Source: Macrostomum lignano
Taxonomy: Eukaryota
Assembly (NCBI GenBank): GCA_002269645.1
Contig: NIVC01002848.1
Coordinates: 71,727 to 135,726, forward strand
Direction: 5' to 3'
DNA: 64,000 bases
Part shown: piece after piece, positions 1 through 60,182 of the stretch
Numbering within the stretch: the stretch's first letter is position 1
How the letters are laid out: each line of letters starts with the position of its first letter
Position numbers and translations under genes: made by a program
The notes under the pieces: generated by a model
Seen by the model: the letters and a program-made list of their open reading frames with translations, nothing else
Told to the model about the DNA's origin: nothing
Databases searched by the model: none

Positions 1-700
1 ACCCAAAAAAGCAAGTTTACATTGCATTACAGTGTAGCTATAGTTCAATTAGTTACGGCTTAACTGTAAGACTAAGTATGTCTCTGGAATTTTTGCCGAA
101 ACATCTAAATGCTTCCAAAGAACGTGTAATAAAAATAAAAACTAAGAAGCTAAATGAATTGCCACGTTAAAAAGAGCTAGACACTGTTTACAATTGACTT
201 GACCTGCACGGGAGCAATATATTCAAATGAATGGCAAAAAATGAGCAATAATTACGCCTTAAGTAAATTCTAAAGCAGTTAATTATTTATTTATATTTTT
301 ACTAACGAAGCTATGTTCTTTTATCTGGTAAATTACTCATATATATAATTGTTAAAATCCAGTACTTCGAATTTTCCGTACCTATAACGCATGCACTTCA
401 TGGTCGTCTCGAAGGAGAATAAATCCATAAAAGTCAAATCACCTACTCAACGAGGAAACTAATTCAGTAAAAACACAATTAGTATGTGTAAAAAGCACAT
501 TACACCACTTTGGTGGATCAAAAGTGCTGTATGATTGCGTTGTTTTTGTTTATTGCAAAAGAGTCACTTTTTCAGTGTAAATTATTCATCTATATTTATG
601 CGGGGTTTTTTTAATCATATTGAATTCATTAGCGTAGGTAAATTCTGCTTAATTGATTAAAACTTTTAATCGGTTAACGGCGCGGCACCCCGAGGTTCTA

Positions 701-780
701 CCGAGTTCGGGCCGACGTCGGCTGGCCGACTTTAGTATGGCCGATCGAATGCCGAGTGGCCGACGTCGGCCCGAGCTCGG
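701..780. repeat. GC-rich inverted repeat (MITE-like palindrome)
   Basis: ccgagttcgggccgacgtcggc (701-722) pairs with gccgacgtcggcccgagctcgg (759-780) with 1 mismatch; it sits in AT-rich DNA. Confidence 0.6.
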
Positions 781-1109
781 ACCGAGCTCGGCTTTGCCAC
801 TGGGGCCTTCGTGCTTATTTATTTGCACCGTCTTGACTATATACCCCTTATTATCCAGGACATTGTGTGTGTCAGACGGGCGTCGATTCCGCCGGTGATT
901 CTCGCGAATAAAGGTCGTATCCAACTATTGAAGAGCAAATGCAGGAATAGGAAGTTATACTATATATCCTGTATATAGCTCAACTCCATATATATATAAC
1001 GTAAATGGCACCTGATTCCCCGATTCAATCAAGCAGGCGATCCTTAAGTCCAAGCCGTTGCATCGCAGCTAGTGCGGGGAGAGGCGCGTTCTTGAAATGG
1101 AAGAGACAC

Positions 1110-1118
1110 TATATAAAG
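1110..1118 (+). promoter_or_regulatory. Candidate TATA box of the neuropeptide gene
   Basis: TATATAAAG upstream of the splice acceptor ctttttcag|ATG at 4930. The link to that gene is inferred. Confidence 0.3.
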
Positions 1119-1348
1119 CTCGTAGTATCGTGGCTATCGAGAACAGACTCGGGTGCCGGTTTTAACGAACTGATCACAACGCATAAGAACTATAACGATT
1201 GAATTTTACCCTTCGGCGGGCAATTCGTCTGCGGGAAATTCTCGTGCTCCCAATTTCTGTGTAGTTGGTATTGTTGTCAACGTATTGCTCCTGTCTAACA
1301 AAATCCCAACCGTTAGACACCAATTTGTTGTAGATGTTTGTTCACTCT

Positions 1349-3398
1349 TGATGGGTTCGGCCTTTTAAGCCTGTAGCTTCGGGCCTCAGAACTCAGAAAT
1401 GAATCACTAAGAGCTCTGGCCTCTCACTCCTGTCAGATGGTCAGCCTCATGGTAGCTAGATTGTGGGCGAGCAGCAAGGTCCTATAGCTAGGAGAAGACA
1501 GCGAGAGACAAGCAGGGAGAATTTGAAAGGTAGAAATTAGCTAATCCGCAGATTAACTAACTCGCTGCCACCAGTCCGTGCGCCCCGGCTCACCAAACCG
1601 GAGCTATCGAAATCGGACTTCCGACTAGAGGGGCACTGCACTTACCTGCCATCTAGTGTCTTTTAGCTGTCTAAATCTCGAAGTCATAGCCGAATAGAAG
1701 GGACGCTGCTGGGACTAAGATCGCATTGGCCATGCAGGGACAGAGAGGACTTTTGCAGGGGGTTCTTGCGCTGGCAAGCCTTCATACACTACTAAATGTA
1801 CTATTTCATGACCGAATTCCCAGAAGTACATGTATAAGTACACGTAACTGCACGCTCTTGGCACTAAATGTGTTAACCCTTCGACAGATAGCGATGATGT
1901 AGATGCATTGTCACTTTCGGAGATCTTTAGACTAATATTTAACTTACTTTAGCCGCTTGACTGCCTGTGACCGCGCCAAAGCGCCAGTCTGGCTCTTAAT
2001 TTGCATGCTTAACATAATGATTTCTTAGATTGACTGGTTGACTGGGAACTGTGCCGCTTCCGGTCCACCGTGACCTCTGCCTCTAGATTTAGCCGCTCAT
2101 CTCAGCTGGCATTGCGAAAAAGAAAGAAAACGCTAAGTCTTTAACTTTCAAATTTAACTTTCGCACTTAATCCGCAATCCTAAACACTTTAGATTGAGTT
2201 AGAGCAAATGGCTACTTTTAATATTAACTGACACTTCTGCCTCGAGATTGGCACACAAAAGCAAGTAAGCAAAAGTGCAAATCCTATCAGACTACCTAGG
2301 AAGGGGTCAGACAAAGGGTGCACCCAGTTAAGCAGGTCAAGAGAGCCTCTCACCAAACCAATCAGAGGACCTATCTGCCGGTAGCCAAGGAATCCACAGA
2401 GACCGAAGCGCTCAGATGGGATGCTGCTGCTGATCTTGACTGACGATTGCCGCCGCTGCTCTTCGCTTGCCGATAGTCGTTGCTGCTCTTAGATGACTGC
2501 CGGGAGATGTTAATGATGCCTCTCAGGGGGAACTTAGCTGTTGAAGCCGAAACTGCCGGGGAAAGGGGGATCAGGACGGCAGGACCAGAAGGGGAGGACC
2601 AGGGTCCGATCTCCAGTATGGCCGGGGAAAAGGCCAGGTAAAACCGCCAGGGGAAAACCGAGCGCGGGTCGAGTTGCCGCCTTATATAGATCTCACGCGG
2701 CCGATTTGTTATAACGCACGCCGAATTTTCCGATTGGCTGAGAGCTTTTGTTAAAATAGGCGCCGAATTTTCTGATTGGTCGAGCCGGGGGCAGTCAGGT
2801 CGACTCTGATTGGCTGAGCTCAAGACCCCAAAACCCACCCCACCAGGTGGCCTTCAGACCCCAGGGAAGTTGACAGGTGCGGTCATAAATCATAAGCAAA
2901 ACATAATAAAAGTCACTTGTCTAGACATCCTGGCGCCAAAAGTGACAGCAAAACGCCTATAAATCAAAGGGGAAAGCAACAGAGCGAGTGGGGAGAAAGC
3001 TGGAAAGACCTCTTTGACCCAGACAGGCTGGAGCCAAAAGTGACAGCTAGACGGCCATAAATCACTGAGAACAGTAAAAAAGCCACAAATCTGGGGGTCA
3101 GAACGAGGTTGAAAACGTCCCTCCCAGACTTAGTGTCGCCTGTCTAGACTGTTGGAGGTCAATCCGTCTCAAACCCAGACAGTCTGACCTTCAAAGATGC
3201 GTAAACAATCCAAAATTAGAATCCTAAGAGAAGTACATTGACTATTTATCATAATTAATAGTGATGGCATAAACTAGTATAGAACTTAGCCTAGATGAGA
3301 GAATGGAGAGAAAATCCTAAGCTAGCCTACTGACAGTAGGGGAAAAGCGCATCGAAGCAAAACGTGCTGTTCTAAGATTGAAATTTGCGTCCTCATCA
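1349..3398 (-). mobile_element. Solo LTR (2050 bp), probably Ty3/Gypsy-type, copy 1
   Basis: Termini TGATG...CATCA; 4-bp TSD CTCT (1345-1348 and 3399-3402); colinear with 4961-6953; CCAAT boxes followed by a TATA (ctatataag) on the minus strand near 2680-2820; no gag/pol. Confidence 0.88.
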
Positions 3399-4929
3399 CT
3401 CTCTTAAATAATCCCACAATTGCCACCAAGTTGTTGTAGTGCCCTGTGATCCTGTCTACAATTAGGTCTCTGGATTTACTCGTTTCCTTAGAAAACCTCT
3501 CTTGTAGCGATCAGCTAATGCCCGAGCGTTAAGACACTGTATTTAATTAAATCCGGAAAATAGTGGCGTTTACTGGGATCAAGGGTGTCCAGCGGTAGGC
3601 TCCTAATCTTCTAACACCTTCACGGTTTCTTTTAACGCCTAATGCCTAGCGCCTAATCTTAGCCTTCACGGCTTATGTACATCGAGTCTTCACGACTTCA
3701 ATCTCCTTCAATCTCTCTATCTGAGTCTGCACGACTTCGATGTTCCCTATTTCCCTCAAGGTCAGTGGTCCTTGATTTCCCTTTGTGTGTGTGTGTGTTT
3801 CACGCACTGAAATTTAACTGAGCTTTCACGCCTCTTCGCTTCACGCTTTTTGAAATAACAAAAAGATATATATTAAAATTGGAGGAAAATTCACCAAGAC
3901 AAACGGTTATAACGTTTACTTTCTGCCCAGGGGGGCCTTTATAAAGATTTCATAGTTCACAGCTATTAGCTGAAGCGAAAATTAAAAAAAATTACCAGGT
4001 TTATAACAAATGGATGTTTTAACAAATACGAAACGTTTTATAACAAAAAAACTAAAGAAATTCGATCAGTATTAGTATTACCCAAAAATGATGTTCTGGC
4101 AGCCAAATAACTTTTGCGCGGGTATCTGATTTTTTACTGCCCACCATGGATGACTGTTTTTGAAATTCTATTGACAGGAACTTAATTATCACTACGCAAA
4201 ACGAGCGGCAATTTGCGCAGAATAGGCACTTTTCAAATGATATATAAATTTTCTAGCGTCAGTCAAAAACCGCTTAGCAATATCCAACCACTACAGCTTA
4301 TAATATACGTGAAAGGATCCTTACGAAAAACAGGCGAATGGAAAATACCTGCAAGTAGCTAAAAATCTTGCAATAGATGTAGAGCAAGACCTACATGATG
4401 TAAATGTGCTACAGCGGAAAGTTCGCTACTGTACGCGCAAGTCGCGTTATGGGGTCGGCCATCATAAACCCGAAAAATCAAAACTTCCAAAGCACTTCCC
4501 TATCATCATTCCTATCAGAAAAGCTCGTTAAAATTTTTCTGGAAAATCAAGTGAGCAAATTTAGCCTTAAGACCTAAATTGTGTCAAAATTAAAAAATTC
4601 CTAGAAATTATTTGCGTTAAAAAACGCAATCTCGCAGGCAGCTAGTAAAATGCACAGGCAGATCAAATCTGATACACATGGTAATCCAGCGAACGATTTC
4701 TGAAGAAAATGTATCGAAAATGCTTAGACAAAAAATCAATCGCAGCGATCTAGATCATAATAAAAGCTGTTGTAGCTTGTTGAACCAACAATTTCTTAAA
4801 ACCAAATTCGATATACGAAGCTGTTTCTACATACTGTGGCCAATGTTAATCTCCAGTACACGGTCATTTTGTGCTTAGACAGTGCGATCATATATTACCG
4901 TTGATTAGATTAACAAGCAGCTTTTTCAG

Positions 4930-7542
4930 ATGTCAATCAGAGGTGCAGGCGGCATTATTCTGATGGGTTTCGACCTTCGGGCTCCTTGTTAGGAAGCCTT
5001 CGGGCCTCAGGCCTCAGAAATGAATCAATTAGAGTCCTGGCCCCCCACTCCTGTCAGATGGTCAGCCCCATGGTAGCTTGATCGTGTGGCGAGCAGTCTA
5101 GGTCCTATAGCTAAGAGAGGGACAGCGAGAGACGAGCAGGGAGAATTTTGAAGGTAGAAATTAGCTAATCCGCAGACTAAAGCTAACTCGCTGCCACCAG
5201 CCCGTGCGTCCTGGCTCACCACACCGGGACTCTCGAAATCGGGCTTCCGACTAGAAGGGGCTTTGCGCTTACCTGCCAACTAGTGTCTTTTTGCTGTCAA
5301 TCTCGAAGTCATAGCCGATGATAAGGGACACTGCTGGGACTAGATCGCATTGGCCATGCAGGTACAGAGGGGACTTGTGCAGGGGATTCTTGCAGTGGCG
5401 AGACTATGGGGTAGCTACATGTACTATTACATTGCTAAATACGAAGATATGTACTTTTGGCCTTCAACGCGCCAACTAGCCTCTCATAGCGCTGATGATA
5501 GACTAACTCGAACTTCAGAGACCGCATGATTCATTACCCGAGCCGCTTGGCTAACCTAGAGTGCACAAAGTACATCTCTGGCGCCGATTCTGCACTTCTG
5601 GCAGTTTTGCTCACTGATTTGGTAGATTGATCGACTGAGAACCGCCTTGCCATTGGTCCACTGTGACCGGCGCCTACTAGCTTAGCTACTCATCTGAGCC
5701 ATCGGCGAACAAAGAAATAAAACCGATAAAAATAACTGTTAGATTTAACCTTCTCCTTAGATCACTTCGCACTTCAGATTGAATTGGAGTTTCAGACTAC
5801 TAGTAGTATTATTAAGTGATTTCTGCCTCAGTAACAGCACTACTGAACAAAATGAGCAAAAGTGTGCGCCTAATTCAGCTACTGAAACAGGGGACAGATA
5901 GGGGATCACCCAATCAAGCAAGTCTAGGTAGCCTCTCACCCAACCAATCAGAAACTCAACAGCCGGAGACCAGGAAATCCACAATGACCAAATCGGCTTG
6001 ATGCTTCGCAGCTGTAGACTCGGGATGATGCTGACACAATCTTCGCTGATAGCTAGCAGGTGATGATCTTCGCTTGATGTTCGCTGCTGACGACCGGGGG
6101 ACTCGTCCTTGATGATGATGGGGGGAAGTCGCAATCCGGGGATCAAGAAACGACGGTCGCGCTCCGGGAACCAGAAGTTGCGTGCTGGACCCGAGCAAGA
6201 GTAAGATGCGTCCGAGCGGGCCAAAAACTCCGGTTTAAATAGCCGCCAACTGGACCGCAGTTTGTTATAACGGAACACGTCGATTCTGATTGGCTGAGTC
6301 GTTTTGTTAAAATGAGCGCCGAATTTTCTGATTGGCTAAGCTTGTTGCTACCCAGAATCACGTGACCAAGAGATCCTATCAGTTCCCACAGGGTCGTAAA
6401 AAGATGACAGGTGCGGCCATAAATCACTCAAAATCGCAACAAAATGATTTATGACTTTTCGCGTAGGATTGACAGAAATTAATGAAAAAATATACATTAG
6501 AAAGCTCTTATTAAATAGAAAGTGAAGATAATGAAGAGAAATTGCTAATCACTAATCCCAAAGTACTTTTAGGGGTAAAACGCATAGCTGTCAAAGCTGT
6601 CACACGCTCGAGTGAATCCGAACAATAGGCTCTGACCTCATAAATCTTGATGGCCTGTCAAAATGATGAGAAAAAAGCTACCGCCCGCATCCTCTCAGAC
6701 CATCTGGCGCCCGTCTCAACACTGAGTGAGGCGCAGGTGGCCGTCAGACCAACTTCGGAAGCGATGATTTACGACCCAAAAAGCTACGCCTATGTTATTA
6801 TGACTACTAGTATGGCCAGACATTATATCTAGTATAGATTCTATGACAATTTGCAGAAAAAGGATAAAAATGCCCATCGCCCACTGTTAGTAGGCTAGTA
6901 AGTTTAGAGCCCATGTGCTAGCGCGGGATTTGGGAAAAAGTGCGTCCTCATCAATTCTGGCGTTGGTTTGTCTCGGAATTGCTTCAGTCCATTCTGCTTC
7001 TGCCCCACGCGATGCTCTGGAAGGTAGGCGCGCTACCGAAACGTTTTTTTAACCTAATTATACTTTTGAATAGTTGAAGATCGAAATTCAGTCAAATAAA
7101 ACCTGTAACTTTATGCACTTACTTTCCGTTAGTGAACTAAGCGAGGCCACTCAAGGCTTGGATTGGGCTCCCATTGAACCATGACGAGACACTTGTTGGA
7201 AGTGAAAAGCTGTTCGATGCAGATGAGACGTCTTCTCTTCACAGGGCTAGTAACAGCAAGCGAGGCCGGTCCAGTTCCGGCAACGTGTTCCGATGGGGCA
7301 AGCGAGACTACGGCAACGTGTTCCGATGGGGCAAGCGAGACTACGGTAACGTGTTCCGATGGGGCAAGCGAGACTACGGCAACGTGTTCCGATGGGGCAA
7401 GCGAGACTACGGCAACGTGTTCCGATGGGGCAAGCGAGACTACGGTAACGTGTTCCGATGGGGCAAGCGAGACTACGGCAACGTGTTCCGATGGGGCAAG
7501 CGAGACTACGGCAACGTGTTCCGATGGGGAAAGCGAAGCTGA
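4930..7542 (+). pseudogene. GNVFRWamide neuropeptide precursor, disrupted by a solo LTR
   Basis: Joining 4930-4960 to 6958-7023 gives the signal peptide MSIRGAGGIILALVCLGIASVHSASAPRDALE. A phase-1 GT-AG intron (7024-7141) joins in frame to exon 7142-7542, which encodes 1x SSSGNVFRW-GKR and 7x DYGNVFRW-GKR (amidation Gly plus dibasic cleavage site). Confidence 0.9.
4961..6953 (-). mobile_element. Solo LTR (1993 bp), same family, diverged copy 2, inserted in a coding exon
   Basis: Termini TGATG...gcgtcctCATCA shared with copy 1; 4-bp TSD ATTC (4957-4960 and 6954-6957); colinear similarity with copy 1 over most of its length. Confidence 0.9.
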
Positions 7543-8267
7543 GTTCGGCTGGGGCAAGCAAGGAATCTATTCAAATTATAACTTGGGGACAAATATTTTG
7601 TCAAATAAATGCGAATAATCACCGAGATGATCGAGTAAAACTTGTGCAAAAAAGGTGCCTGTAAGACTTCCGCTTCTCATTTCAAGCTATACATGCACTT
7701 AAGGCTGATTCACTCTGCCAGCGAATGAGCCATTAAATCACACACGACCTATATTTACAGTCGGGATCCCACCAAATTTGGTCTTATTTGAAGCCGCGCC
7801 GATGTGAAGTCCTGATGTTTTTAAAGTTCTCTCTAATAATAAAACCAGTAATCGATGCAAGAAAATATATACGAAAGGAAACTCACTAGAGGAACGTCAA
7901 AGGAGCCGTTCGACGCCAAGTGGCGTACTGAATAAGCTAATCTGAATTCCAACGTGGCAGTAGCTATAGAAAGGGTTTGCAGTGTGTAAAACTTGACATA
8001 CGAGCGTAGACATCTTGTGATCACTGTGACAATGTATGAATATAATTGAAAGGATTTTTCTTATCTGCAGATGGGCTCTCGATGGTCAAAACTCAATTAA
8101 TTAATCTTTTGAAATTTTTATCCTGCACAACTTCTATAGGTTGTTATTAAAGTCGTTAGATAAACCTACAGCTACTGTTCCTGTTCATGACAAAGTTACT
8201 ACCAGAGAAACTAACAAGTGTGGTATAATGAGGTAAATAGGGGTTGAGCCAATAGGAGTTGCAGGAC

Positions 8268-8600
8268 GGCGATTCTCAACAGAGGAATTGGAGGGCGATT
8301 CTCAACAGGGGAATTGGAAGGCGATTCTCAACAGAGGAATTGGAGGGCGATTCTCAACAGGGGAATTGAAGGGCGATTCTCAAGAGTTCGGGGGCGATTC
8401 TCAATAGGAGTTGGGGGCGATTCTCAACAGGAGTTGGGGGCGATTCTCAATAGGGGAATTGGAGGGCGATTCTCAACAGAGGAATTGGAGGGCGATTCTC
8501 AACAGGGGAATTGGAAGGCGATTCTCAACAGGAGTTGGGGCGATTCTCAATAGGGATTGGGGCGATTCTCAACAGGAGTTGGAGGGCGATTCTCAATGGC
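8268..8600. repeat. Minisatellite, ~22-26 bp unit (gggcgattctcaacagaggaattgga)
   Basis: Direct tandem copies visible. Confidence 0.9.
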
Positions 8601-9061: not shown

Positions 9062-9890
9062 GGTCTATAAGGCGGTCATTGCGAACTCTTCCGCCTGATT
9101 GTGCTTGGGTCTATAAGTCGGTCATTGCGAACTCTTCCGCCTGATCGTGCTTGGGTCTATAAGTCGGTCATTGCGAACTCTTCCGCCTGATTTTGCTTGG
9201 GTCTATAAGTCGGTCATTGCGAACTCTTCCGCCTGATTGTGCTTGGGTCTATAAGTCGGTCATTGCGAACTCTTCCGCCTGATCGTGCTTGGGTCTATAA
9301 GTCGGTCATTGCGAACTCTTCCGCCTGATTGTGCTTGGGTCTATAAGTCGGTCATTGCGAACTCTTCCGCCTGATCGTGCTTGGGTCTATAAGTCTGTCA
9401 TTGCGAACTCTTCCGCCTGATTGTGCTTGGGTCTATAAGTCGGTCATTGCGAACTCTTCCGCCTGATTGTGCTTGGGTCTATAAGTCAATCATTGCGAAC
9501 TCTTCCGCCTGATTGTGCTTGGGTCTATAAGTCAATCATTGCGAACTCTTCCGCCTGATTGTGCTTGGGTCTATAAGTCAATCATTGCGAACTCTTCCGC
9601 CTGATTGTGCTTGGGTCTATAAGTCAATCATTGCGAACTCTTCCGCCTGATTGTGCTTGGGTCTATAAGTCGGTCATTGCGAACTCTTTCGCCTGATTGT
9701 GCTTGGGTCTATAAGTCGGTCATTGCGAACTCTTCCGCCTGATTGTGCTTGGGTCTATAAGTCGGTCATTGCGAACTCTTTCGCCTGATTGTGCTTGGGT
9801 CTATAAGTCGGTCATTGCGAACTCTTCCGCCTGATTGTGCTTGGGTCTATAAGTCGGTCATTGCGAACTCTTTCGCCTGATTGTGCTTGG
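9062..9890. repeat. Minisatellite, 46-bp unit, ~18 copies
   Basis: ggtctataagtcggtcattgcgaactcttccgcctgattgtgcttg repeated. Confidence 0.95.
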
Positions 9891-10508: not shown

Positions 10509-11135
10509 TTAGTTTAAACTTGCAGCAGGAGTTGCCGGAGCAACGTAGACTTCAAAAGATCGTCTGGCGGCATCGCCAGGCACTGGGCCGCCAAGTGGAG
10601 TGTACAACTGCAGCTCCACCCGGTGCCAGCCGGTTGGAGCAGTAGCCGGAGCTTGCAGACGCAGTTGGCAGACGGCGCTTAAGCCTGGAAGCAACGGCGG
10701 CAGTAGCAGACGCTCGGGGCCCAGCGCCAGAGCCCGGCCTCGACGGCAGCGCAAATGACAGCCTGGCGGACTGGAACCGCCTAAACCAGACCGACTACCC
10801 GTTGATAAGCATCGATTCGTCACTCGGCACGTGGCTATGACGTCATCTTGCGCGAACGGCTGCATTGATAATGAATCCGAATTGGCGCCAGAAATGAATA
10901 ACTGCGGCGAACTAAGCGTTACATCGTCGATGATTAAATCAATTGAGTCAGTGAGTAGGTTATTTGGGCCATAATCGAACTGATCAATTGACTGTGCAAT
11001 ATTCACTTGTTGATGCTCGTTGCTATGGCGACACTGACAGGCTGAACTACTAGTATGTTGAAGTTGCGACTGCTCCGTTGCTAAGCGACTGAATTGACAA
11101 GAGAGCTGACACTCTACCTCGTCAATTTCCATGAT
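10509..11135 (-). CDS. Probable coding exon of an unknown protein (207-aa ORF)
   Basis: Long non-repetitive ORF with a pyrimidine-rich acceptor just upstream (tttcattacagtcactag|ATC ATG). A possible phase-0 first exon lies at 14347-14276 (MATTSSRFSATPGSGDAPESERSA|gtacgc). No family recognised. Confidence 0.5.
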   Translation of the reverse strand: MMEIDEVECQLSCQFSRLATEQSQLQHTSSSACQCRHSNEHQQVNIAQSIDQFDYGPNNLLTDSIDLIIDDVTLSSPQLFISGANSDSLSMQPFAQDDVIATCRVTNRCLSTGSRSGLGGSSPPGCHLRCRRGRALALGPERLLLPPLLPGLSAVCQLRLQAPATAPTGWHRVELQLYTPLGGPVPGDAARRSFEVYVAPATPAASLN

Positions 11136-14639: not shown

Positions 14640-16895
14640 CTGCAGCTCAGATCCTCCGATCCCTGTCCCGGGGCTCAACCCGGCGAAAGAGAGCGACTTC
14701 GATGTTGGACCCATCACTGTGAGTGAGGTTCGCTATGCGCACTTGACAGGATGAAGCCTGATGCTGCTGCGGGCCTCGGTGACACCCCCCTCAGCTCGGG
14801 TGCTCAAGCTGCCTGAACTGACGGACATCGTCACGGCTCTACTTAATACTGGTAACAACTCGCCAATCGGACGTGATCTTTCCACCCAGGCCCCAGAGAC
14901 GTGGCGCACCTCAAGAATGTGTCAATCCCGAAGGACACCTCGACCGACCTGAACAACCAGCTTGAGTGCACGCTTCCCAAACTGCTCAACTCGATACTGA
15001 GAAACAGCGGCTCGTGCGGGTCATCGACCCACTTCTGCTCGCCGTTCAGAGCGGATTTCGGCCGGGCCTGTCAACCACCGAGCAAATCGCTACCGTCCAG
15101 TGCATTGTCGAAACATGAAGGCTAGCTGAGGCACAATATAGTTAGCATTATCTTTGTTGATTTCATCAAAGCTTTTGACACCATATCGATCGCTCTGTCA
15201 TCCCCCTTATTTTGGCTGCTTACGAAGTTCCTCGAGCCCTCTGCGCGGTGACGGACTTCTACGAGGGTGCTTATTAAGTTCCCGGAAAATGAAGCTTGAA
15301 AATGCGCAAATCAAACGAAACTTCATCAGCAGTTAGGTGGGATGTTCCACGTTTGCTTGTAAAATTTCAGCTTAATCGATCGCAATGATCCACCGCAGTG
15401 GCCAAAGTTTGGCTGAAAAAGTGCCCCCCCCCTTGCCACAGCCGACTGACCGCGACAGGCGAGTGGCGATCCGGGTCCAGTTTCGGCTGGGCAGCTCTGC
15501 GGCCACCTGCCTCCAGACGCTGCGTGAGGCTCTTCGGGATCAAGCGCCATCCCAGTCGATGGTGTATGAGTTGTTTGCGCGCTTCCGCTGTGGCTCGGCT
15601 CGGCCACTCTGGACGACGATCCTCGCGAGGGGCGGCCAAGTTCGGCCGTGTCCGACGGAGTCGTTGCTGCTGTTCGACGTAACGTGGACGAAGATCCGCG
15701 AGTGACGATTCGCTGGTTGGAGCAGCTCGTCGAGGTGTCGGATTCCACCATCATTTAAGATCCTGCACCAGCACCTCCGCATGAGAAAGCTGTCCGCTCG
15801 CTGGGTGCCCCACCAGCTCAGCGCTGACCAGATGCGAGCCCGCATTAAATTCGCCGACCTCATGGCGGCCAGGTTTGACGGAGGCCGCTCAAAGTTGGTG
15901 GATAACATCCTCACTGGCGACGAAACCTGGGTCTACTTCTATGACCCAGAGACCAAAGAGCAGAGTCAAAGGAGCATCAAATTTCGTCGCGAGGGCAGCG
16001 TCGGAAAAGTGATGGCGGCCATTTTCTTCCGACGCAGCGGCATCCTACCGCCAGTGCTGCTGCAGCAAGGCGCCACAGTGACGGCAGAATGGTACAGCAC
16101 CGTCTGCTTGCCTCAGGTTCTGCAGGCGCTCGCACAGCAGCGGTCGAAGACGCTTGCCAGATGCATCTTCCTCCATCAGGACAACGCTCCCGCGCACCGG
16201 ACACGAGTGACCCAGGAGTTCCTTTAGGCGACCCAGCTAGTCCAGTTGCCGCATCCGGCATATTCGCCGGACCTGGCGCCTGCTGACTTCTTCCTCTTTC
16301 CCAGGATGAAGAAAAATCTGAAGGGGAAGCGCTTCGACTCGAGGGAGGAGCTGGTTGTTGCGCTGCAAGCTGAGCTGGACAGCTTCACCAAAGCTGATCT
16401 CAGGGGGTGCTTCGACGCATGGTTCCAGCGCCTACAAAAGTGCTTCGAATAGGGTGGAAATTATGTTGAGAAGTTATAATAGACTGTGGTCGCTGATTCG
16501 ATTATCAGAACTGAACTTTTCCGTGAGCTTAATAAGCACCTTTCGTAACACCAAAGTTTTTGTTTAGCTCGCACAGAGGATCGCACAGATTACTTCTCCA
16601 CCAGCTCTGGCGTCCTGCACGGGGACACCCTCGCCTCTTTCATCTGATCTATTACGTCCTCCGCCGCGCGCTCGAGAAAGAAGACGGCTTTGTCGTCGCA
16701 CGCCGCAGGAGCGGACGTTTCCCCGGTGTCACGATCGCTGCCCTCGATTTTGCTGGCGACATCGTCCACTCCTGCCGAGACCCGGAAGCCGCTCAGCGCA
16801 CCCTCACCCGCCTCTCTCATGAAGGCGAGCGAGTTGGCCTGAGAATCAGGCCCAAAAAACCGAGGTCCTGCACGTCGGCATCGCGAACGCCCCTT
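14640..16895 (+). mobile_element. Degenerate non-LTR retrotransposon (LINE, RTE-like) RT fragment, split by a mariner
   Basis: Frameshifted RT motifs: VIDPLLLAVQSGFRPGLSTTEQIA and IFVDFIKAFDTI to the left of the mariner; SSGVLHGDTLA and AALDFAGDIV (decayed YADD) to the right. Confidence 0.85.
15262..16545 (+). mobile_element. Mariner (DD34D) transposon, full length, inactive
   Basis: Imperfect ~28-bp TIRs (cgagggtgcttattaagttcccggaaaa / ttttccgtgagcttaataagcacctttcg); TA TSD; 1284 bp; motifs WVPHQL, TGDETW, HQDNAPAH and YSPDLAPADF; frameshifts and a stop codon. Confidence 0.95.
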
Positions 16896-38219: not shown

Positions 38220-39007
<788 letters not shown>

Positions 39008-40749: not shown

Positions 40750-41308
<559 letters not shown>

Positions 41309-41834
41309 AGTATCACTTCTGTAAAAGCAATCTCTGTATTAATTACGAGTATTTTATTATCGACTTCTATAACTTGACAAAAATATGGGAGAAAAGGCGT
41401 ATACATCATAGGAGAAGCTCTTTGCTTGAACGGGATGGGCTGTGAATCAAGCGAGGGAAACCTCGGAGAAGCATTGAGACTAATGGCATTCTGGACAGCA
41501 GGAAAGAAACCGTAGCCATGCAGGATGTAAAATTGATCCTGGGAAGTGAGTTGGCAAGAAAATCCCTTACTGCACTATTGCCGCTGCTGCTGTCTTAGTC
41601 AATACTTTTCTCTTACCTTAGCAGCTAGCTACGAACGATAGCTAAATACGATTAATACTTTTTCTATAGTCACTATTTTTCATGTCAGCCTCTATCAGCT
41701 GATCAGCTGCACCGCACTTAAGGTCTAATCGAATAGGCTATGTTACTATTATCTACAGTGTATTAATCAGCAAACCATTCCATAAATAAATAGTTTTAGC
41801 TCAAGGCTATTTAATAGCCTTGGTCACTTACAGT

Positions 41835-42778: not shown

Positions 42779-45700
42779 ATGCTAGGCTTAGATTTTGTCG
42801 ATTTTGTGCAGAAATGGCAGATTTCAAATTACGTAAGCGTTGAAGATTTCGCGGACAAGTTTAATTCGCTGTTCAGCACCCTACTGCTGATCCTATGCGC
42901 GCTGATTATCTCCGCTAAGCAGTACGTCATGCAAGCCCTCAGCTGCAACTGTCCCAAAACTAATGCCGGAAAAACTATTGAGTACGTTGAGAACTTCTGC
43001 TGGGTCACCGGGACTTACGCGATTGGCGAGCACGAGGAACTGCCAGTAAAGGAAGCCGGGTGGAAGCTGTTTGAGTCCAGGCGGATCAGTGAGAAGTTTT
43101 TATGAGTTTATTTTTGCGCGTTCCTGTTGAGAACATTAGCAGGAAAAACGAGAGAGCAAGCCTCGATAGAGCATGAGAAACGTGAGAGCAAGTCTCGATG
43201 GAGCATGAGAAACGTGAGAGCAAGTCTCGATAGAGCATGAGAAACGTGAGAGCAAGTCTCGATGGAGCATGAGAAACGTGAGAGCAAGTCTCGATGGAGC
43301 ATGAGAAACGTGAGAGCAAGTCTCGATGGAGCATGAGAAACGTGAGAGCAAGTCTCGATGGAGCATGAGAAACGTGAGAGCAAGTCTCGATGGAGCATGA
43401 GAAACGTGAGAGCAAGTCTCGATGGAGCATGAGAAACGTGAGAGCAAGTCTCGATAGAGCATGAGAAACATGAGAGAAAGTCTTGATAGAGCATGAGAAA
43501 CGTGAGAGCAAGTCTCGATAGAGCATGAGAAACATAAGAGAAAGTCTCGTTAGAGCATGAGAAATTGAGAGCGTACACAACCGCCCCGAGCAAGACACTG
43601 CTCAGATTCTACTCAGCAAGTATTTTAACAAAAATGTAACAAAGACACAATCACACGCCAAATAAAACATTTCAGATTACTACCAATGGGTGCCATTCAT
43701 GCTAGGCCTACAATGCGTCATGTTCTATCTGCCGCATCTAATCTGGGTTGCTATAGTAACAAATCGACTTGGTTCAGACGCGCAATACCTAGTAACGGAA
43801 GCCGCTTCGGTTGCTAAGGAAACCAGCATTGATCGCCGCGATCAGGTGTTGAATCACCTGGCTAATTCGGTGCTGCACATGCAGACCGTACACCGGGAGT
43901 ACAGCGATGGCCGATTGGCCAAATTCCGTAGCAAGCTGGTCCGCCTAGCCGGAGTCTGCTTTCCCAGCAAGCGACTTGGCACGGCGCTGGTGTTTGCCTA
44001 CCTGCTTGTCAAGCTGCTGTACCTGGCTAACTGCTTCGGTCAGCTGTTCCTAATGCACAGCTTCCTCGGCCTTGGCGGGCATCATTTGGCGGTTACTAAC
44101 CGTACCGCTGGAAGCTTGAATACCGCTGCCCGTCCCGGCTTGCTCGCCGAGATGCTGGGCTGGGACCTGGTGGCTGCCGTAGCCAGCGGGCGCGACTGGC
44201 ACTCTGGCATGTTCCCGAGGTCCACCCTGTGCCGAGTCAGACTGCTCAGCGTCGGTCACGAGGTTCTGGTGTGCCAGTGCGCACTGCCGGTCAATATGCT
44301 CAATGAAAAGGTAGAGCAAGGGGGATTGTGGAGTGGATGTTTTTACATTGAGCCCTTCTAGAGACCCTGACACTCTTTAGGAAGACCCTGACACTCTTCA
44401 GGAGACCCTGACACTCTTTAGGGAGACCCTGACACTCTTCTAGAGACCCTAACACTCTTCAGGAGACCCTGACACTCTTCAGGGGACCCTGACAGTCTTC
44501 AAAAGACCCTGACACCCTTCTAGAGACCCTGACACTCTTCAGGAGACCCTGACAGTCTTCAAGAGACCCTGACACCATTCTAGAGACCCTGACACTCTTT
44601 AGGAAGACCCTGACACTCTTTAGGGAGACCCTGACACTCTTCTAGAGACCCTGACACTCTTCAAGAGACCCTGACACTCTTCAGGAGACCCTGACAATCT
44701 TCTAGAGACCCTGACACTCTTCAGGAGACCCTGACACTCTTCAGGGGATCCTGACAGTCTTCAAGAGACCCTGACACCCTTCTAGAGACCCTGACACTCT
44801 TCAGGAGACCCTGACACTCTTCAGGAGACCCTGACACTCTTCAGGGGACCCTGACACTCTTCAGGAGACCCTGACACTCTTCAGGGGATCCTGACAGTCT
44901 TCAAGAGACCCTGACACTCTTCAGGAGACCCTGACACTCTTCAGGGGACCCTGACAGTCTTCAAGAGACCCTGACACTCTTAAAGAGACCCTGACACTCT
45001 TCAAGAGACCCTGACACCCTTCTAGAGACCCTGACACACTAGAGACCCTGACACACTAGACAGCCCGACACCCTAGAGACCCTGACACCCTAAAGACCCT
45101 GACACGCTTTTAGGGACCAAAAAAGACCTACAAGAGTTCCTGACACATTTCTGACTGAATTTGAGCATGAATAAGCACACAGCAACCCTGCAGAACTTAT
45201 ATAAATTAATCAATCAATTAAAACAAACTAAATTGTTATGGAACAAAATGGGCAAAAGCTAGTGTCTCAATAGATTATTAATACGTCACAGATCCAAGCC
45301 CGAAAGCATTTAAAACTGCACTACATCAGTTCAAAGCTTTAGTGCGAATGTTATTTTTAATTTAAAAACTGGATCCCCAGTTTTTTCTTTTGTTTAAGTC
45401 TGCTATCTCAGCAAACCACCAAATGAAAGCTGAAACTGTGCGAAATTATGCTGACTCGGCAAAATTTTAGCAAAGTTTTTTGCAAGTAGCTCGCTACCAA
45501 AATCTTTTTCATTTCTGCAACATCAGGGGTCTGATTACTGGTTTGCTATCCAGTTTTTGCGTCTGCTTTTGTCGCTCAAGAAAAGAATCCGAACATTTTT
45601 CTTTCCGTGGAGCTCGGCATTGACTTTGAATACAGCAGTGTGAAAGTTTTACATCCAAAACGGCAGAGGGAGAGACAGAGGGAGAGACAGAGGGAGAGAC

Positions 45701-48700
45701 AGAGGGAGAGACAGAGGGAGAGACAGAGGGAGAGACAGAGGGAGAGACAGAGGGAGAAGGAGAGGGAGACACAGAGGGAGAGACAGAGGGAGACACAGAG
45801 GGAGAGACGGAGGGAGAGACAGAGGGAGAGACAGAGGGAGAGACCGAGGGAGAGACAGAGGGAGAGACAGAGGGAGAGACAGAGGGAGAGACAGAGGGAG
45901 AGACAATGAGAGATAGAGGGAGAGACAGAGGGAGAGACAGAGGGAGAGACAATGAGAGATAGAGGGAGAGACAGAGGGAGAGACCGAGGGAGAGACAGAG
46001 GGAGAGACAGAGGGAGAGACAGAGGGAGAGACGGAGGAAGAGCCAGAGGGAGACACAGAGGGAGAGACAGAGGGAGACACAGAGGGAGAGACGGAGGGAG
46101 AGCCAGAGAAAGAGACAGAGGGAGAGAGAGAGGGAGAGACAGAGGGAGAGACAGTGAGACACGGAGGGAGAGACAGAGGGAGAGACAGAGGGAGAGACAG
46201 AGGGAGAGACAGAGGGAGAGACAGAGGGAGAGACAGGGAGAGACGGAGGGAGAAACAAAGGGAGAGGGAGAGACAGAGGGAGAGACAGAGGGAGAGACAG
46301 AGGGAGAGACAGAGGGAGAGACGGAGGGAGAGACAGAGGGAGAGACAGAGGGAGACACAGAGGGAGAGACGGAGGGAGAACCAGAGGGAGAGACAGAGGG
46401 AGAGACCGAGGGAGAGACAGAGGGAGAGACAGAGGGAGAGACAGAGGGAGAGACAGAGGGAGAGACCGAGGGAGAGACAGAGGGAGAGACAGAGGGAGAG
46501 ACAATGAGAGATAGAGGGAGAGACAGAAAGAGAGACAGAGGGAGAGACAGAGGGAGAGACAGAGGGAGAGACGGAGGAAGAGCCAGAGGGAGACACAGAG
46601 GGAGAGACAGAGGGAGACACAGAGGGAGAGACAGAGGGAGAGACAGAGGGAGAGACAATGAGAGATAGAGGGAGAGACAGAGGGAGAGACAGAGGGAGAG
46701 ACAGAGGGAGAGACAGAGGGAGAGACAGAGGGAGAGACGGAGGGAGAGACAGAGGGAGAGACGGAGGGAGAGCCAGAGGGAGAGACAGAGGGAGAGACAG
46801 AGGGAGAGACAATGAGAGATAGAGGGAGAGACAGAGGGAGAGACAGAGGGGGACAGAGGGAGAGACAGAGGGAGAGACGGAGGGAGAAACAGAGGGAGAG
46901 ACAGAGGGAGAGACCGAGGGAGAGACAGAGGGAGAGACAGAGGGAGAGACAATGAGAGATAGAGGGAGAGACAGAGGGAGAGACAGAGGGAGAGACAGAG
47001 GGAGAGACAGAGGGAGAGACGGAGGAAGAGCCAGAGGGAGAGACAGAGGGAGAGACAGAGGGAGAGACCGAGGGAGAGACAGAGGGAGAGACAGAGGGAG
47101 AGACAATGAGAGATAGAGGGAGAGACAGAGGGAGTGACAGAGGGAGAGACAGAGGGAGAGACAGAGGGAGAGACGGAGGAAGAGCCAGAGGGAGACACAG
47201 AGGGAGAGACAGAGGGAGACACAGAGGGAGAGACGGAGGGAGAGCCAGAGGAAGAGACAGAGGGAGAGACAGAGGGAGAGACAGAGGGAGAGACAGTGAG
47301 AGATAGAGGGAGAGACAGAGGGAGAGACAGAGGGAGAGACCGAGGGAGAGACAGAGGGAGAGACAGAGGGAGAGACAGGGAGAGACGGAGGGAGAAACAA
47401 AGGGAGAGGAAGAGACAGAGGGAGAGACAGAGGGAGAGACAGAGGGAGAGACAGAGGGAGAGACGGAGGGAGAGACGGAGGGAGAGACAGAGGGAGACAC
47501 AGAGGGAGAGACGGAGGGAGAACCAGAGGGAGAGACAGAGGGAGAGACAGTGAGAGAGACAGAGGGAGAGACAGTGAGAGACAGAGGGAGAGACAGAGGG
47601 AGACACAGAGGGAGAGACGGAGGGAGAGACAGAGGGAGAGACAGAGGGAGAGACAGAGGGAGAGACCGAGGGAGAGACAGAGGGAGAGACAGAGGGAGAC
47701 ACAGAGGGAGAGACGGAGGGAGAACCAGAGGGAGAGACAATGAGAGATAGAGGGAGAGACAGAGGGAGAGACAGAGGGGGACAGAGGGAGAGACAGAGGG
47801 AGAGACAGAGGGAGAGACAGAGGGAGAGACAGGGAGAGACGGAGGGAGACACAGAGGGAGAGACAGAGGGAGAGACAGAGGGAGAGACAGAGGGAGAGAC
47901 GGAGGGAGAGCCAGAGGGAGAGACAGAGGGAGAGACAGAGGGAGAGACGGAGGGAGAGCCAGAGGGAGAGACAGAGGGAGAGACAGAGGGAGAGACAGAG
48001 GGAGACACAGTGGGAGAGACGGAGGGAGAGACAGAGAGAGACAGAGGGAGAGACAGAGGGAGAGACAGAGGGAGAGACAGAGGGAGAGACAGAGGGAGAG
48101 ACAGAGGGAGAGACAGAGGGAGAGACCGAGGGAGAGACAGAGGGAGAGACAGAGGGAGAGACAATGAGAGATAAAGGGAGAGACAGAGGGAGAGACAGAG
48201 GGAGAGACAGAGGGAGAGACAGAGGGAGAGACGGAGGAAGAGCCAGAGGGAGACACAGAGGGAGAGACAGAGGGAGACACAGAGGGAGAGACGGAGGGAG
48301 AGCCAGAGGAAGAGACAGAGGGAGAGACAGAGGGAGAGACAGAGGGAGAGACAGTGAGAGATAGAGGGAGAGACAGAGGGAGAGACAGAGGGAGAGACAG
48401 AGGGAGAGACAGAGGGAGAGACAGAGGGAGAGACAGGGAGAGACGGAGGGAGACACAGAGGGAGAGACAGAGGGAGAGACAGAGGGAGAGACAGAGGGAG
48501 AGACGGAGGGAGAGCCAGAGGGAGAGACAGAGGGAGAGACAGAGGGAGAGACGGAGGGAGAGCCAGAGGGAGAGACAGAGGGAGAGACAGAGGGAGAGAC
48601 AGAGGGAGACACAGTGGGAGAGACGGAGGGAGAGACAGAGAGAGACAGAGGGAGAGACAGAGGGAGAGACAGAGGGAGAGACAGAGGGAGAGACAGAGGG

Positions 48701-51700: not shown

Positions 51701-52485
51701 AGGCAGAGAGACAGAGGGAGAGACAGAGGGAGAGAGGGGGATCGAGACAGAGGGAGAGACAGAGGGAGAGACAGAGGGGGACAGAGGGAGAAACAGAGGG
51801 AGAGAGAGGGAGAGACAGAGGGAGAAACAAAGGGAGAGGGAGAGACAGAGGGAGAGACAGAGGGAGAGACAGAGGGGGACAGAGGGAGAGACAGAGGGAG
51901 AGACAGAGGGAGAGACAGAGGGAGTGACAGAGGGAGAGACAGAGGGAGACAGAGTGAGTTTCAGAATAGCAGAAGCAGGTAGCGGGAATCATGCTCAGAG
52001 GCCATCAACCCCAAGCCAGATGACAAACGCCGCCCCCGCAGGTGTACATGATGCTGTGGCTGTGGACCCTGGCGGCAGCCTTCATCACGGTGCTCTCCGT
52101 GCCAGTCTGGTTTGCCAGAGTCGGCCTCCGAGTCAGCAGAATTCGCTTCATCCGACGCCAGCTGCTGCTGTCCCAGACTCCAATAATGACTGGCCATGAA
52201 TATCGGTCAGCCAGCACTGGCAAACCCAGATTAGTCGCAGATAAGTGCAACTTTGCCAAGATGGCCAAAGACATGGTGGACAACCTGCTGCACGCTGACG
52301 GCGTGTTCCTGTTCAAGATGATGCAGCTGAATGCAGGCGACGTCGCCGCGGGCCAAGTGCTGCGTCGGCTGTACGAGAACTGGAAGCATCAGCTGGCCGA
52401 CACGCCGGCAGAGAAGTTGACGATAAGTGAGCCTGGCCAGGAGAAACCGCCGAAAACTTCGGAGAAGAACTTAGTAGTAGTGTGA
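42779..52485 (+). CDS. inx: Innexin (gap-junction protein), 3 exons, 462 aa
   Basis: Exons 42779-43088, 43676-44310 and 52042-52485 splice in frame; signatures VEDFADKFN, KQYV, N|YYQWVPF, FPRSTLC and LPVNMLNEK|VYMMLWLW. Confidence 0.95.
43150..43570. repeat. 32-bp minisatellite in innexin intron 1
   Basis: gagcatgagaaacgtgagagcaagtctcgatg repeated. Confidence 0.95.
44360..45110. repeat. ~21-bp minisatellite in innexin intron 2
   Basis: gagaccctgacactcttcagg repeated. Confidence 0.93.
45662..51955. repeat. 6.3-kb purine-rich satellite, 12-bp core gagggagagaca, in innexin intron 2
   Basis: Direct reading; recurring variant blocks indicate higher-order duplication. Confidence 0.97.
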
Positions 52486-55604: not shown

Positions 55605-56580
55605 TCATGAATACTTGGTGTACTGCAGAGGCTCAATCTCTTGAGCTAAAAACTCGTGAACTTTTGGCCAGATCTCGTTTGAGTAGCTGCCAGTAAATTG
55701 CACTAGAAGGCCGCGCTGTCTGAAGTATTCTAGCACGGGTTCAGTCAATTCTTTGTAGTGCGACAGGCGCTCCAGTACCACAGACTCTTTGTCATCTTCG
55801 CGTTGGATTAACGGCTCGCCAGTGACGTCATCGAAGCCCTTTGGATAGAGGGGGGGGTGAGTGTACATTGGGGTTTGGCGTAGAGGATAGATAGAGAGCA
55901 AGTGTACATTGGGGTTTGGCGTAGAGGATAGAGGGGCGAGTGTACATTGGGGTGTGGCATAGAGGATAGAGGGGCGAGTGTACATTGGGTGTGGCATAGA
56001 GGATAGAGGGGCGAGTGTACATTGGGTGTGGCATAGAGGATAGAGGGGCGAGTGTACATTGGGTGTGGCATAGAGGATAGAGGGGCGAGTGTACATTGGG
56101 GTTTCACAGAGATTCAGAGAATAGAGAAGCAAGTGCGAATAGGGTTTATAAACAGTGTTTATAGTATCTGTGGTTTTGGCCCAAGATAGAGCCTGGGTGA
56201 ACATTAGGTTTAAAATAAGTTAGTAATGAGAACAAGTACATATTCTGGAATTCTGGAACATTTTCAAGCATATATATAACGCACCTCTCGCACAGGCTTA
56301 TTAAACTCTGTGTGATAAGTCCTCCCACTTCCCGGATGAATCCACCGGCCTTTAATACGTTCAACAATGACGTTAAACGGCACGTCAAGATTCATAACTC
56401 GATCAATTTGCACGCGTGAGCAAAGACTTTCAGCCTGCGGCAGTGTGCGCGGAAAGCCGTCTAATAGTAAGTGAGAATTTGCGGCAGCTTTGGATTGCTC
56501 TTCAATGATGAGCTCAAGTACCAGACTGTCTGGCACTAGTTCGCCGCGGTTCATGTACTTGCCAACTTCTAGACCGAGCT
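55605..56580 (-). CDS. AK3: Adenylate kinase, AK3-like (mitochondrial GTP:AMP phosphotransferase), last two exons
   Basis: Exon 56580-56285 (GELVPD, LLDGFPRTLPQAE, RWIHPGSGRTYH) splices in phase 0 to exon 55838-55605 (GFDDVTGEPLIQREDDK...EIWPKV). The P-loop exon is not in the window. Confidence 0.88.
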
Positions 56581-60158: not shown

Positions 60159-60182
60159 GTCTGTTTAATTTTTTTCTTAAAA

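What the first reader, a model, noticed from the sequence alone, without database searches (positions are those of the whole stretch)
4930..7023. Solo LTR inserted in the signal-peptide exon knocks out a neuropeptide gene
Seen: removing 4961-6957 restores MSIRGAGGIILALVCLGIASVHSA..., and the ATTC TSD lies inside the Ile-Leu codons. With the insert, the frame stops after 20 codons (...IILMGFDLRAPC*). The peptide-coding exon is otherwise intact, suggesting a recent knockout, a polymorphic allele, or a redundant duplicate. A cryptic rescue splice (ATG G|gtttcg to ttagag|cc at 6910) would be in frame, but that is speculation.
Basis: partly seen in the sequence, partly recalled or inferred. Interest (0 to 1): 0.7.

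Follow-up and report, generated by a model that had tools for sequence, protein, structure and literature searches.

The report
LTR insertion breaks flatworm neuropeptide gene
A 2-kb mobile-element remnant, most likely a solo retrotransposon LTR, sits inside the signal-peptide exon of an FRWamide-type neuropeptide gene in a Macrostomum flatworm genome and should silence this copy; this is a real but ordinary kind of mutation.

Summary
A 1993-bp element (4961-6953) with TGATG...CATCA ends and a 4-bp target-site duplication (ATTC) splits the first coding exon of a two-exon gene. As assembled, the ORF from ATG 4930 stops after 20 codons. Joining the flanks restores a textbook signal peptide and a good phase-1 splice donor at 7023/7024.

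Exon 2 encodes GRSSSGNVFRW-GKR plus seven identical DYGNVFRW-GKR units. Its relatives are a Macrostomum lignano protein with the same intron phase and position, Urechis 'FRWamide' and the Capitella LFRWamide gene.

A second, related 2050-bp element with the same conserved ends and its own duplication (CTCT) lies 1.5 kb upstream. This defines the element boundaries independently of the reading-frame argument. The insert has no coding capacity, no internal LTRs and no long inverted repeats. Solo LTR is therefore the best reading, but no full-length parent element could be found.

An adenylate kinase gene in the window is 93% identical to M. lignano. That genome is 21% LTR retrotransposon and heavily duplicated.

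I could not test whether an intact allele or duplicate exists.

Verdict: real, supported, ordinary; low to moderate interest.

The parts
4930..4960 (+). 5' part of coding exon 1 (Met1 to the first base of Leu11). It is preceded by ttttcag|ATG (an acceptor-like or possibly trans-splice site) and by a TATA-like ATATATTA at 4890-4897.
   Evidence: The M. lignano paralogue starts MSNRS, against MSIRG here.
4957..4960 (.). Left copy of the 4-bp target-site duplication, ATTC.
4961..6953 (.). Inserted 1993-bp element, most likely a solo LTR, with TGATG...CATCA termini. Its orientation (U3-R-U5) is unresolved. A conserved TATA-like site lies at 6234 and two conserved inverted CCAAT boxes at 6289 and 6331. 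AATAAA is at 5716 on the + strand.
   Evidence: No ORF is conserved between the two copies, and there are no internal LTRs or long inverted repeats.
4990..4992 (+). Premature TAG stop created by reading from exon 1 into the insert (20 codons).
6954..6957 (.). Right copy of the target-site duplication, ATTC.
6958..7023 (+). 3' part of coding exon 1: the rest of the hydrophobic core, the cleavage region ...SVHSA/SAPRDALE and a phase-1 end. The donor G|GTAGGC lies at 7023|7024.
   Evidence: donor +4.4 bits on a rough matrix. The intron has the same phase and position as in M. lignano.
7024..7141 (+). Intron, 118 nt if acceptor 7142 is used. With the alternative in-phase acceptor 7223 the intron is 199 nt. 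The in-phase acceptor 7133 would give a stop after two codons.
   Evidence: The acceptor choice is an inference; there is no RNA evidence.
7142..7542 (+). Exon 2 coding part: a pro-region, one GRSSSGNVFRW-GKR unit and seven DYGNVFRW-GKR units, then Ser and TGA (7540-7542).
   Evidence: Homology is shown.
7278..7536 (+). 33-nt tandem array (7.8 copies, 97% matches) that encodes the peptide units. The only differences between units are three synonymous changes.
7604..7609 (+). AATAAA, a likely poly(A) signal about 60 nt after the stop codon.
   Evidence: read directly from the sequence.
1349..3398 (.). Second, related 2050-bp element in the same relative orientation. It has the same termini (TGATGGGTT...TGCGTCCTCATCA) and its own duplication, CTCT (1345-1348 and 3399-3402). 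It is 86% identical to the insert over the first 440 nt, with only conserved islands beyond that.

Best explanation
The window comes from Macrostomum lignano or a very close relative. It carries a compact two-exon gene for an FRWamide-type, multi-copy amidated neuropeptide precursor.

An LTR retrotransposon integrated into codons 10/11 of the signal-peptide exon and duplicated 4 bp (ATTC). The element was later reduced to a single LTR by recombination between its two LTRs.

Translation from the only available ATG now runs into the LTR and stops after 20 residues, before the hydrophobic core is complete. The rest of exon 1 and the peptide exon have no in-frame start. This copy therefore cannot make a secreted precursor and is a null allele or a young pseudogene.

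Shown: the insertion, its boundaries, the frame disruption, the restored signal peptide and homology of the gene.

Inferred: that the element is an LTR, that it is solo through recombination, that no splicing rescue occurs, and that the event is recent.
For: - **Insertion anatomy and restored ORF:**
- **Independent boundary definition:** a second copy has conserved 9-nt and 13-nt termini and its own 4-bp duplication.
- **Insert content:** no ORF is conserved between the copies. There are no internal terminal repeats or long inverted repeats, no tRNA and no Rfam hit.
- **Gene identity:** the best relatives are M. lignano BOX15_Mlig026077g1 (E=1e-17, 52% identity), Urechis FRWamide (E=3e-10) and Capitella CAPTEDRAFT_185359. 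The M. lignano gene has the same layout: a signal-peptide exon, then a phase-1 intron a few residues after the cleavage site.
- **Hydrophobic core:** the best 10-residue Kyte-Doolittle mean is 3.3 when restored, 1.8 with the insert and 2.7 for the M. lignano signal peptide.
- **No bypass:** no alternative signal exon lies within 7 kb upstream, and no other copy of exon 1 or of the peptide repeats is in the window.
- **Host:** the AK3 exons are 93% identical to M. lignano, while the next best hit is 60%. In that genome LTR retrotransposons make up 21% of the sequence (PMC5730564).
- **Recency:** both duplication copies are identical, the exon 2 frame is open and the peptide units differ only synonymously.
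Against: - No full-length element carrying this LTR was found. The window holds no gag-pol sequence, and no eukaryotic DNA database was available.
- The promoter and poly(A) layout of the insert does not give a clear U3-R-U5 orientation.
- No RNA, read or population data were available. Splicing around the insert, heterozygosity, or assembly collapse of a full-length element into one LTR cannot be excluded.
- The in-phase acceptor with the best pyrimidine tract (7133) would itself give a stop. The gene model of exon 2 therefore rests on homology, not on transcripts.
Confidence: 0.75

Rival explanations
1. The insert is a complete non-autonomous mobile element of another class, not an LTR. The consequence for the gene is the same.
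For: No parent element with gag-pol was found. Only two copies were seen, and the U3-R-U5 layout is unclear.
Against: TG...CA ends with a 4-bp duplication and only a 5-bp inverted repeat do not fit the usual hallmarks of terminal-inverted-repeat DNA transposons, Helitrons, LINEs or SINEs, DIRS or Penelope elements (general knowledge). There are no internal mini-LTRs, so it is not a TRIM or LARD. Conserved termini on otherwise diverged bodies look like integrase attachment sites.
Confidence: 0.12
2. The gene still works because the LTR is removed as an intron through cryptic splice sites. The precursor then has an altered N-terminal region in its signal peptide.
For: In-frame, stop-free donor and acceptor pairs exist. 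Donor 4943 with acceptor 6910 or 6922 would give MSIRA(HVLA)RDLGKSASSSILALVCLGIASVHSA..., which keeps the whole hydrophobic core.
Against: The acceptors have weak pyrimidine tracts of 0.41-0.53. There is no transcript evidence. No DYGNVFRW-type protein exists in a database that includes the transcript-based M. lignano annotations.
Confidence: 0.06
3. The copy was already redundant or dying, being one of several duplicates in a partly duplicated genome. The insertion is then tolerated rather than causal, and an intact duplicate or allele supplies the peptide.
For: The M. lignano DV1 assembly has 180 Mb of duplicated non-repetitive blocks at 95% identity or more (PMC5730564). The paralogue P0001 is on two contigs that are 97-98% identical over 8 kb.
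Against: No near-identical protein was found in the 5.8-billion-cluster database, which includes the NCBI and UniProt M. lignano annotations. This is weak evidence, since short genes are easily missed and the window may come from another species or line. There is no other disabling change in the gene.
Confidence: 0.35
4. In the animal the site holds a full-length LTR retrotransposon. The assembly collapsed its two LTRs into one.
For: This is a known failure mode of assemblers. It cannot be excluded without reads.
Against: The assembly resolves a 6.3-kb array of a 12-nt satellite and dozens of minisatellites, which suggests long reads that would span an element. Both junctions are clean.
Confidence: 0.08

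Closest known systems
Macrostomum lignano hypothetical protein BOX15_Mlig026077g1 (P0001)
   Same: It is a short precursor with a signal peptide, an acidic pro-region and tandem xGVFRW-GKR units. It has the same two-exon layout, with a phase-1 intron just after the signal peptide. Like the window gene, it lacks the Cys motif in the pro-region.
   Different: Overall identity is only 52%. Its peptides are (Q/P)SGVFRWamide rather than DYGNVFRWamide. It is intact and present on two contigs. It is a paralogue, not the same gene.
Urechis unicinctus FRWamide precursor (GenBank MT162138; PMC7737342) and the Capitella/Platynereis LFRWamide/'RYamide' (sNPF-like) precursors (PMC6389622)
   Same: They carry multiple FRW-G-KR units preceded by a signal peptide, and sequence similarity is significant. 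In Urechis the gene is expressed in the larval apical organ and ciliary-band nerves.
   Different: The annelid precursors are longer (about 190-250 aa). They carry a conserved C..LC...C.C motif in the pro-region and have heterogeneous peptide copies. The receptor and function in flatworms are unknown.
Solo-LTR and LTR-retrotransposon insertional alleles in general (for example gypsy insertions in Drosophila, IAP/ETn insertions in mouse, Gret1 in grape VvmybA1); from general knowledge
   Same: An LTR element is inserted in or near a gene with a short target duplication. Recombination between the two LTRs leaves a single LTR, giving a loss-of-function or altered allele.
   Different: Here the insertion lies inside the signal-peptide coding sequence. 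No phenotype, population frequency or parent element is known.

Membership tests
Solo LTR of an LTR retrotransposon | 5'-TG...CA-3' termini that form a short inverted repeat | tested here: met
   TGATG...CATCA. The same termini occur in the second copy.
Solo LTR of an LTR retrotransposon | Flanked by a 4-6 bp target-site duplication | tested here: met
   ATTC/ATTC for the insert and CTCT/CTCT for the upstream copy.
Solo LTR of an LTR retrotransposon | Non-coding, 0.1-5 kb long, with no internal terminal repeats | tested here: met
   The element is 1993 bp. The ORFs in the two copies are not similar at the protein level. No internal LTRs or long inverted repeats were found.
Solo LTR of an LTR retrotransposon | The same sequence occurs as paired direct repeats around a gag-pol interior with a primer-binding site and polypurine tract elsewhere in the genome | not testable with these tools
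   There is no such interior in the window. No eukaryotic DNA database was available, and the metagenome scan was empty.
Solo LTR of an LTR retrotransposon | U3-R-U5 organisation with a promoter and a poly(A) signal | tested here: inconclusive
   A TATA-like site and two inverted CCAAT boxes are conserved in both copies, but the strand is ambiguous.
FRWamide / LFRWamide-type neuropeptide precursor | Repeated x-F-R-W-Gly units bounded by dibasic cleavage sites | tested here: met
   Eight units ending FRWGKR.
FRWamide / LFRWamide-type neuropeptide precursor | Significant sequence similarity to named family members | tested here: met
   Urechis FRWamide E=2.8e-10, the Capitella gene E=2.3e-9 and the M. 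lignano paralogue E=1.2e-17.
FRWamide / LFRWamide-type neuropeptide precursor | N-terminal signal peptide | tested here: not met
   Not met in the sequence as assembled, because the ORF stops after 20 codons. It is met only after joining the flanks of the insert. This is the finding itself.
FRWamide / LFRWamide-type neuropeptide precursor | Cys-containing motif in the pro-region, as seen in annelid members | tested here: not met
   The motif is absent here and in the M. lignano paralogue. It is present in P0002-P0006 and P0009. It may not be a defining feature outside annelids.
FRWamide / LFRWamide-type neuropeptide precursor | Processed, amidated peptide made in neurons | not testable with these tools
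   This needs in situ hybridisation and mass spectrometry.
Spiralian LFRFamide / sNPF family | Peptides activate an sNPF-type receptor, or precursor orthology is shown by phylogeny | not tested
   There is only weak similarity to mixed FRY/FRW/FRF precursors (P0013, P0015 and P0016; E of 1e-5 to 1e-4). The link is suggested in PMC6389622.

The most novel reading that the evidence does not exclude
The solo LTR has been intronised. A cryptic donor in codon 5 (4942|4943) and an acceptor near the LTR's 3' end (6921|6922 or 6909|6910) would splice it out in frame. The gene would still make DYGNVFRWamide peptides from a precursor with a remodelled signal-peptide N-region. That would be a caught-in-the-act case of intron gain from a retroelement inside a signal peptide.
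Probability: 0.05. Interest if true: 0.55.

Novelty: new member of a known kind. Interest (0 to 1): 0.25.

Why it matters
The value is mainly practical. It marks a likely natural null, or a haplotype-specific null, of a neuropeptide gene in a laboratory flatworm model. If the insert is polymorphic between lines, it could serve as a ready-made loss-of-function allele.

It also shows that Macrostomum has at least two FRWamide-type genes. In the papers I could search, this family is named only in annelids.

It is a reminder that short neuropeptide genes broken by mobile elements go unannotated. As biology it is an ordinary insertional mutation in a genome that is one-fifth LTR retrotransposon.

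Tried and rejected
- **Intact allele or paralogue, protein search:** the restored precursor gave nothing above 52% identity.
- **Intact allele or paralogue, metagenomes:** scans with the protein and with a conserved 26-nt LTR block both came back empty.
- **Source or homologous contig:** exact look-ups of four window ORFs (60183-62354, 43690-44361, 7181-7618 and 10509-11132) found nothing on record.
- **Shared repeats:** I compared the window with the three fetched loci. Only the peptide repeats match.
- **Coding capacity of the LTR:** the minus-strand ORFs of 155 and 173 aa at equivalent places in the two copies are not similar at the protein level, so I rejected them.
- **tRNA or known RNA content:** none was found.
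- **Alternative signal exon:** a scan of 1-7140 for an ATG followed by a hydrophobic core and a good phase-1 donor found none.
- **The two LTR copies as the two ends of one element:** rejected, because each has its own matching duplication.
- **A 6-bp duplication (ATTCTG):** rejected by comparison with the upstream copy, which fixes the element start at TG.
- **Frame-1 ORF over the repeats (7181-7618):** treated as a by-product of the repeats.
- **Species from the innexin exon:** uninformative, with best hits at 41%. The AK3 exons settled it.

Full report
**1. Observation**

- An ATG at 4930 opens MSIRGAGGIIL. From 4961 the frame continues as MGFDLRAPC and stops at TAG 4990-4992.
- The stretch 4961-6953 (1993 bp) begins TGATGGG and ends CCTCATCA.
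- ATTC occurs directly before it (4957-4960) and directly after it (6954-6957).
- Joining 4930-4960 to 6958-7023 gives MSIRGAGGIILALVCLGIASVHSASAPRDALE: a charged N-region, a 10-residue hydrophobic core and a small-residue cleavage region.
- That sequence is followed by a good splice donor, G|GTAGGC, in phase 1.
- The best 10-residue Kyte-Doolittle mean is 3.3 for the joined sequence and 1.8 for the interrupted one.

**2. The element boundaries are defined independently**

A BLAST of the insert against the window finds a second, related element at 1349-3398.
- In the pairwise alignment, similarity begins exactly at TGATGGGTT and ends exactly at TGCGTCCTCATCA. The flanks do not align.
- The first 440 nt are 86% identical. 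The rest is a mosaic of conserved islands: a TATA-like site, two inverted CCAAT boxes, and TGACAGGTGCGGnCATAAATCA.
- The upstream copy has its own 4-bp duplication, CTCT, at 1345-1348 and 3399-3402.

These are therefore two independent insertions of related mobile elements, both with TG...CA ends and 4-bp duplications. The upstream copy also fixes the duplication at the gene as 4 bp (ATTC). The 6 bp that happen to match there (ATTCTG) are a coincidence.

**3. What the element is**
- It has no coding capacity. The long minus-strand ORFs at equivalent places in the two copies share no protein similarity.
- It has no internal terminal repeats and no long inverted repeats.
- It contains no tRNA and no Rfam family.

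TG...CA ends, a 4-bp duplication, a length of 2 kb and termini conserved on otherwise diverged bodies are the signature of an LTR. A single LTR bounded by the original duplication is what recombination between the two LTRs of an element leaves behind.

By general knowledge, other transposon classes do not fit this combination of ends and duplication.

The one defining feature I could not test is the existence of full-length elements with this LTR around a gag-pol interior. The window has none, and no eukaryotic DNA collection was available.

The orientation (U3-R-U5) is unresolved. The conserved TATA-like site and CCAAT boxes can be read on either strand.

**4. What the gene is**

Exon 2, in the frame of 7141-7542, encodes a pro-region, GRSSSGNVFRW-GKR and seven identical DYGNVFRW-GKR units, then Ser and a stop. 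AATAAA follows 60 nt later. The 33-nt units differ only by three synonymous changes.

A search with the joined-flank precursor returns these relatives:
- a Macrostomum lignano hypothetical protein (P0001, E=1e-17);
- the Urechis unicinctus protein named FRWamide (P0004; PMC7737342);
- the Capitella gene described as LFRWamide (PMC6389622);
- Owenia and unnamed environmental relatives.

The M. lignano gene (L001:4001-4560) has the same architecture. Exon 1 is the signal peptide plus five residues, followed by a phase-1 intron (G|GTAGGT ... TTGCAG|AC) and then the peptide exon. This supports the two-exon model and the assignment of 4930-4960 plus 6958-7023 as the true first exon.

Annelid members carry a Cys motif in the pro-region. 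Both Macrostomum-type proteins lack it.

**5. Caveat on exon 2**

Three in-phase acceptors exist.

| Exon start | Acceptor sequence | Result |
|---|---|---|
| 7133 | ttccgttag\|tg (best pyrimidine tract) | Val-Asn-stop |
| 7142 | ctaag\|cg | 165-aa precursor |
| 7223 | gatgcag\|at | shorter pro-region |

Which one is used is unknown. A branch-point-like CTTAC lies only about 10 nt before the first AG, so skipping to 7142 is plausible. That is an inference.

**6. Consequence**
- Inside the insert, the last in-frame stop before the exon remnant is at 6891-6893, and no in-frame ATG follows it. A transcript starting in the LTR therefore cannot restore a start codon.
- No alternative exon (an ATG, a hydrophobic core and a good phase-1 donor) exists in 1-7140.
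- No second copy of exon 1 or of the peptide array is in the window.
- An AATAAA at 5716 on the sense strand could also cause premature polyadenylation.

As assembled, this copy cannot make a secreted precursor.

In-frame cryptic splices do exist. The best alternative (4943) scores -0.6, and the natural donor scores +4.4. The acceptors are weak. Rescue is possible but unlikely.

**7. Host and context**

Two exons of an AK3-type adenylate kinase on the minus strand are 93% identical to M. lignano A0A1I8IZ41. Most of the differences look like errors in that gene model. The next best hit is 60%. The window is therefore from M. lignano or a very close relative.

That genome is reported to be 21% LTR retrotransposon and 15% simple or tandem repeat. 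About 39% of its genes are trans-spliced, and the DV1 line carries large duplicated blocks (PMC5730564). The window fits this description, with more than 30 tandem arrays.

The paralogue P0001 lies on two contigs that are 97-98% identical over 8 kb. A duplicate or allelic copy of the present locus, with or without the insert, is therefore quite possible.

None could be retrieved. No near-identical protein is in the database, even though the M. lignano annotations are included. Exact ORF look-ups and metagenome scans found nothing.

**8. Age**

Three observations point to a recent event:
- both duplication copies are identical;
- the element termini are intact;
- about 400 nt of coding sequence is open, with only synonymous variation between units.

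By rough reasoning, a neutral 400-nt ORF is expected to take a disabling hit after about 1% divergence. I cannot date the insertion without other copies of the LTR.

**9. Verdict**

It is a new instance of a well-known kind of event: an LTR insertion, reduced to a solo LTR, that disrupts a coding exon.

There is a modest bonus. It reveals a second FRWamide-type gene in Macrostomum, a family named so far only in annelids in the literature I could search.

Noticed in passing
window 1349-3398: A second 2050-bp element related to the insert lies 1.5 kb upstream of the gene's ATG, in the same relative orientation, with its own 4-bp duplication (CTCT). Two related elements within 3.6 kb at the 5' end of one small gene may hint at an integration preference, or may be chance.
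   Followed up: partly
window 45664-51949: A 6.3-kb purine-rich satellite with unit CAGAGGGAGAGA (12 nt), about 537 copies at 88% matches. It shows extreme GC and AT skew.
   Followed up: no
window 27467-28037, 37364-37716, 38221-39007, 40750-41309: Long tetranucleotide arrays, (GTCA)n, (CAGA)n, (TAGA)n and (AACT)n, of 90-200 copies each. More than 20 minisatellites are scattered through the window, including 8264-8596 and 9062-9890 just 3' of the neuropeptide gene.
   Followed up: no
window 26886-27290 and 28689-31700, minus strand: A mucin-like, highly repetitive Ser/Thr/Ala/Pro ORF of about 1000 aa ends in an EGF-like Cys pattern. A downstream exon has an EGF-like motif and a transmembrane segment. 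This is probably one membrane mucin-type gene.
   Followed up: partly
window 15781-16227: A remnant of a mariner-type transposase (Pfam Transposase_1, E=6.5e-6) lies in a GC-rich block (14-18 kb).
   Followed up: partly
window 59388-63045 (runs towards the window end): An AT-rich block holds long ORFs of 256, 723 and 247 aa. The 723-aa ORF hits Pfam Endonuclease_7, and the next ORF carries a YSDCDS motif typical of protein-primed B-family DNA polymerases. This is probably part of a Polinton/Maverick-like element. I did not reconstruct or print it.
   Followed up: partly
window 43690-44361: An innexin exon. Its relatives carry PF00876, and the best hits are only about 41% identical, including a cestode protein.
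   Followed up: partly
window 55608-55850 and about 56170-56461, minus strand: Two exons of an AK3-type adenylate kinase are 93% identical to M. lignano A0A1I8IZ41. A 37-nt minisatellite (55854-56102) lies between them.
   Followed up: yes
window 7181-7618: An ATG-initiated 145-aa ORF lies in the +1 frame across the peptide repeats (…TCSDGASETTA… repeats). It is most likely a by-product of the repeat. It is the ORF a naive gene caller would pick, now that the true start is cut off.
   Followed up: partly
L001 and L002 (M. lignano NIVC01004577.1 and NIVC01001908.1): The paralogous FRWamide-type gene of M. lignano sits on two contigs that are 97-98% identical over 8 kb. This illustrates the duplicated state of that assembly.
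   Followed up: yes
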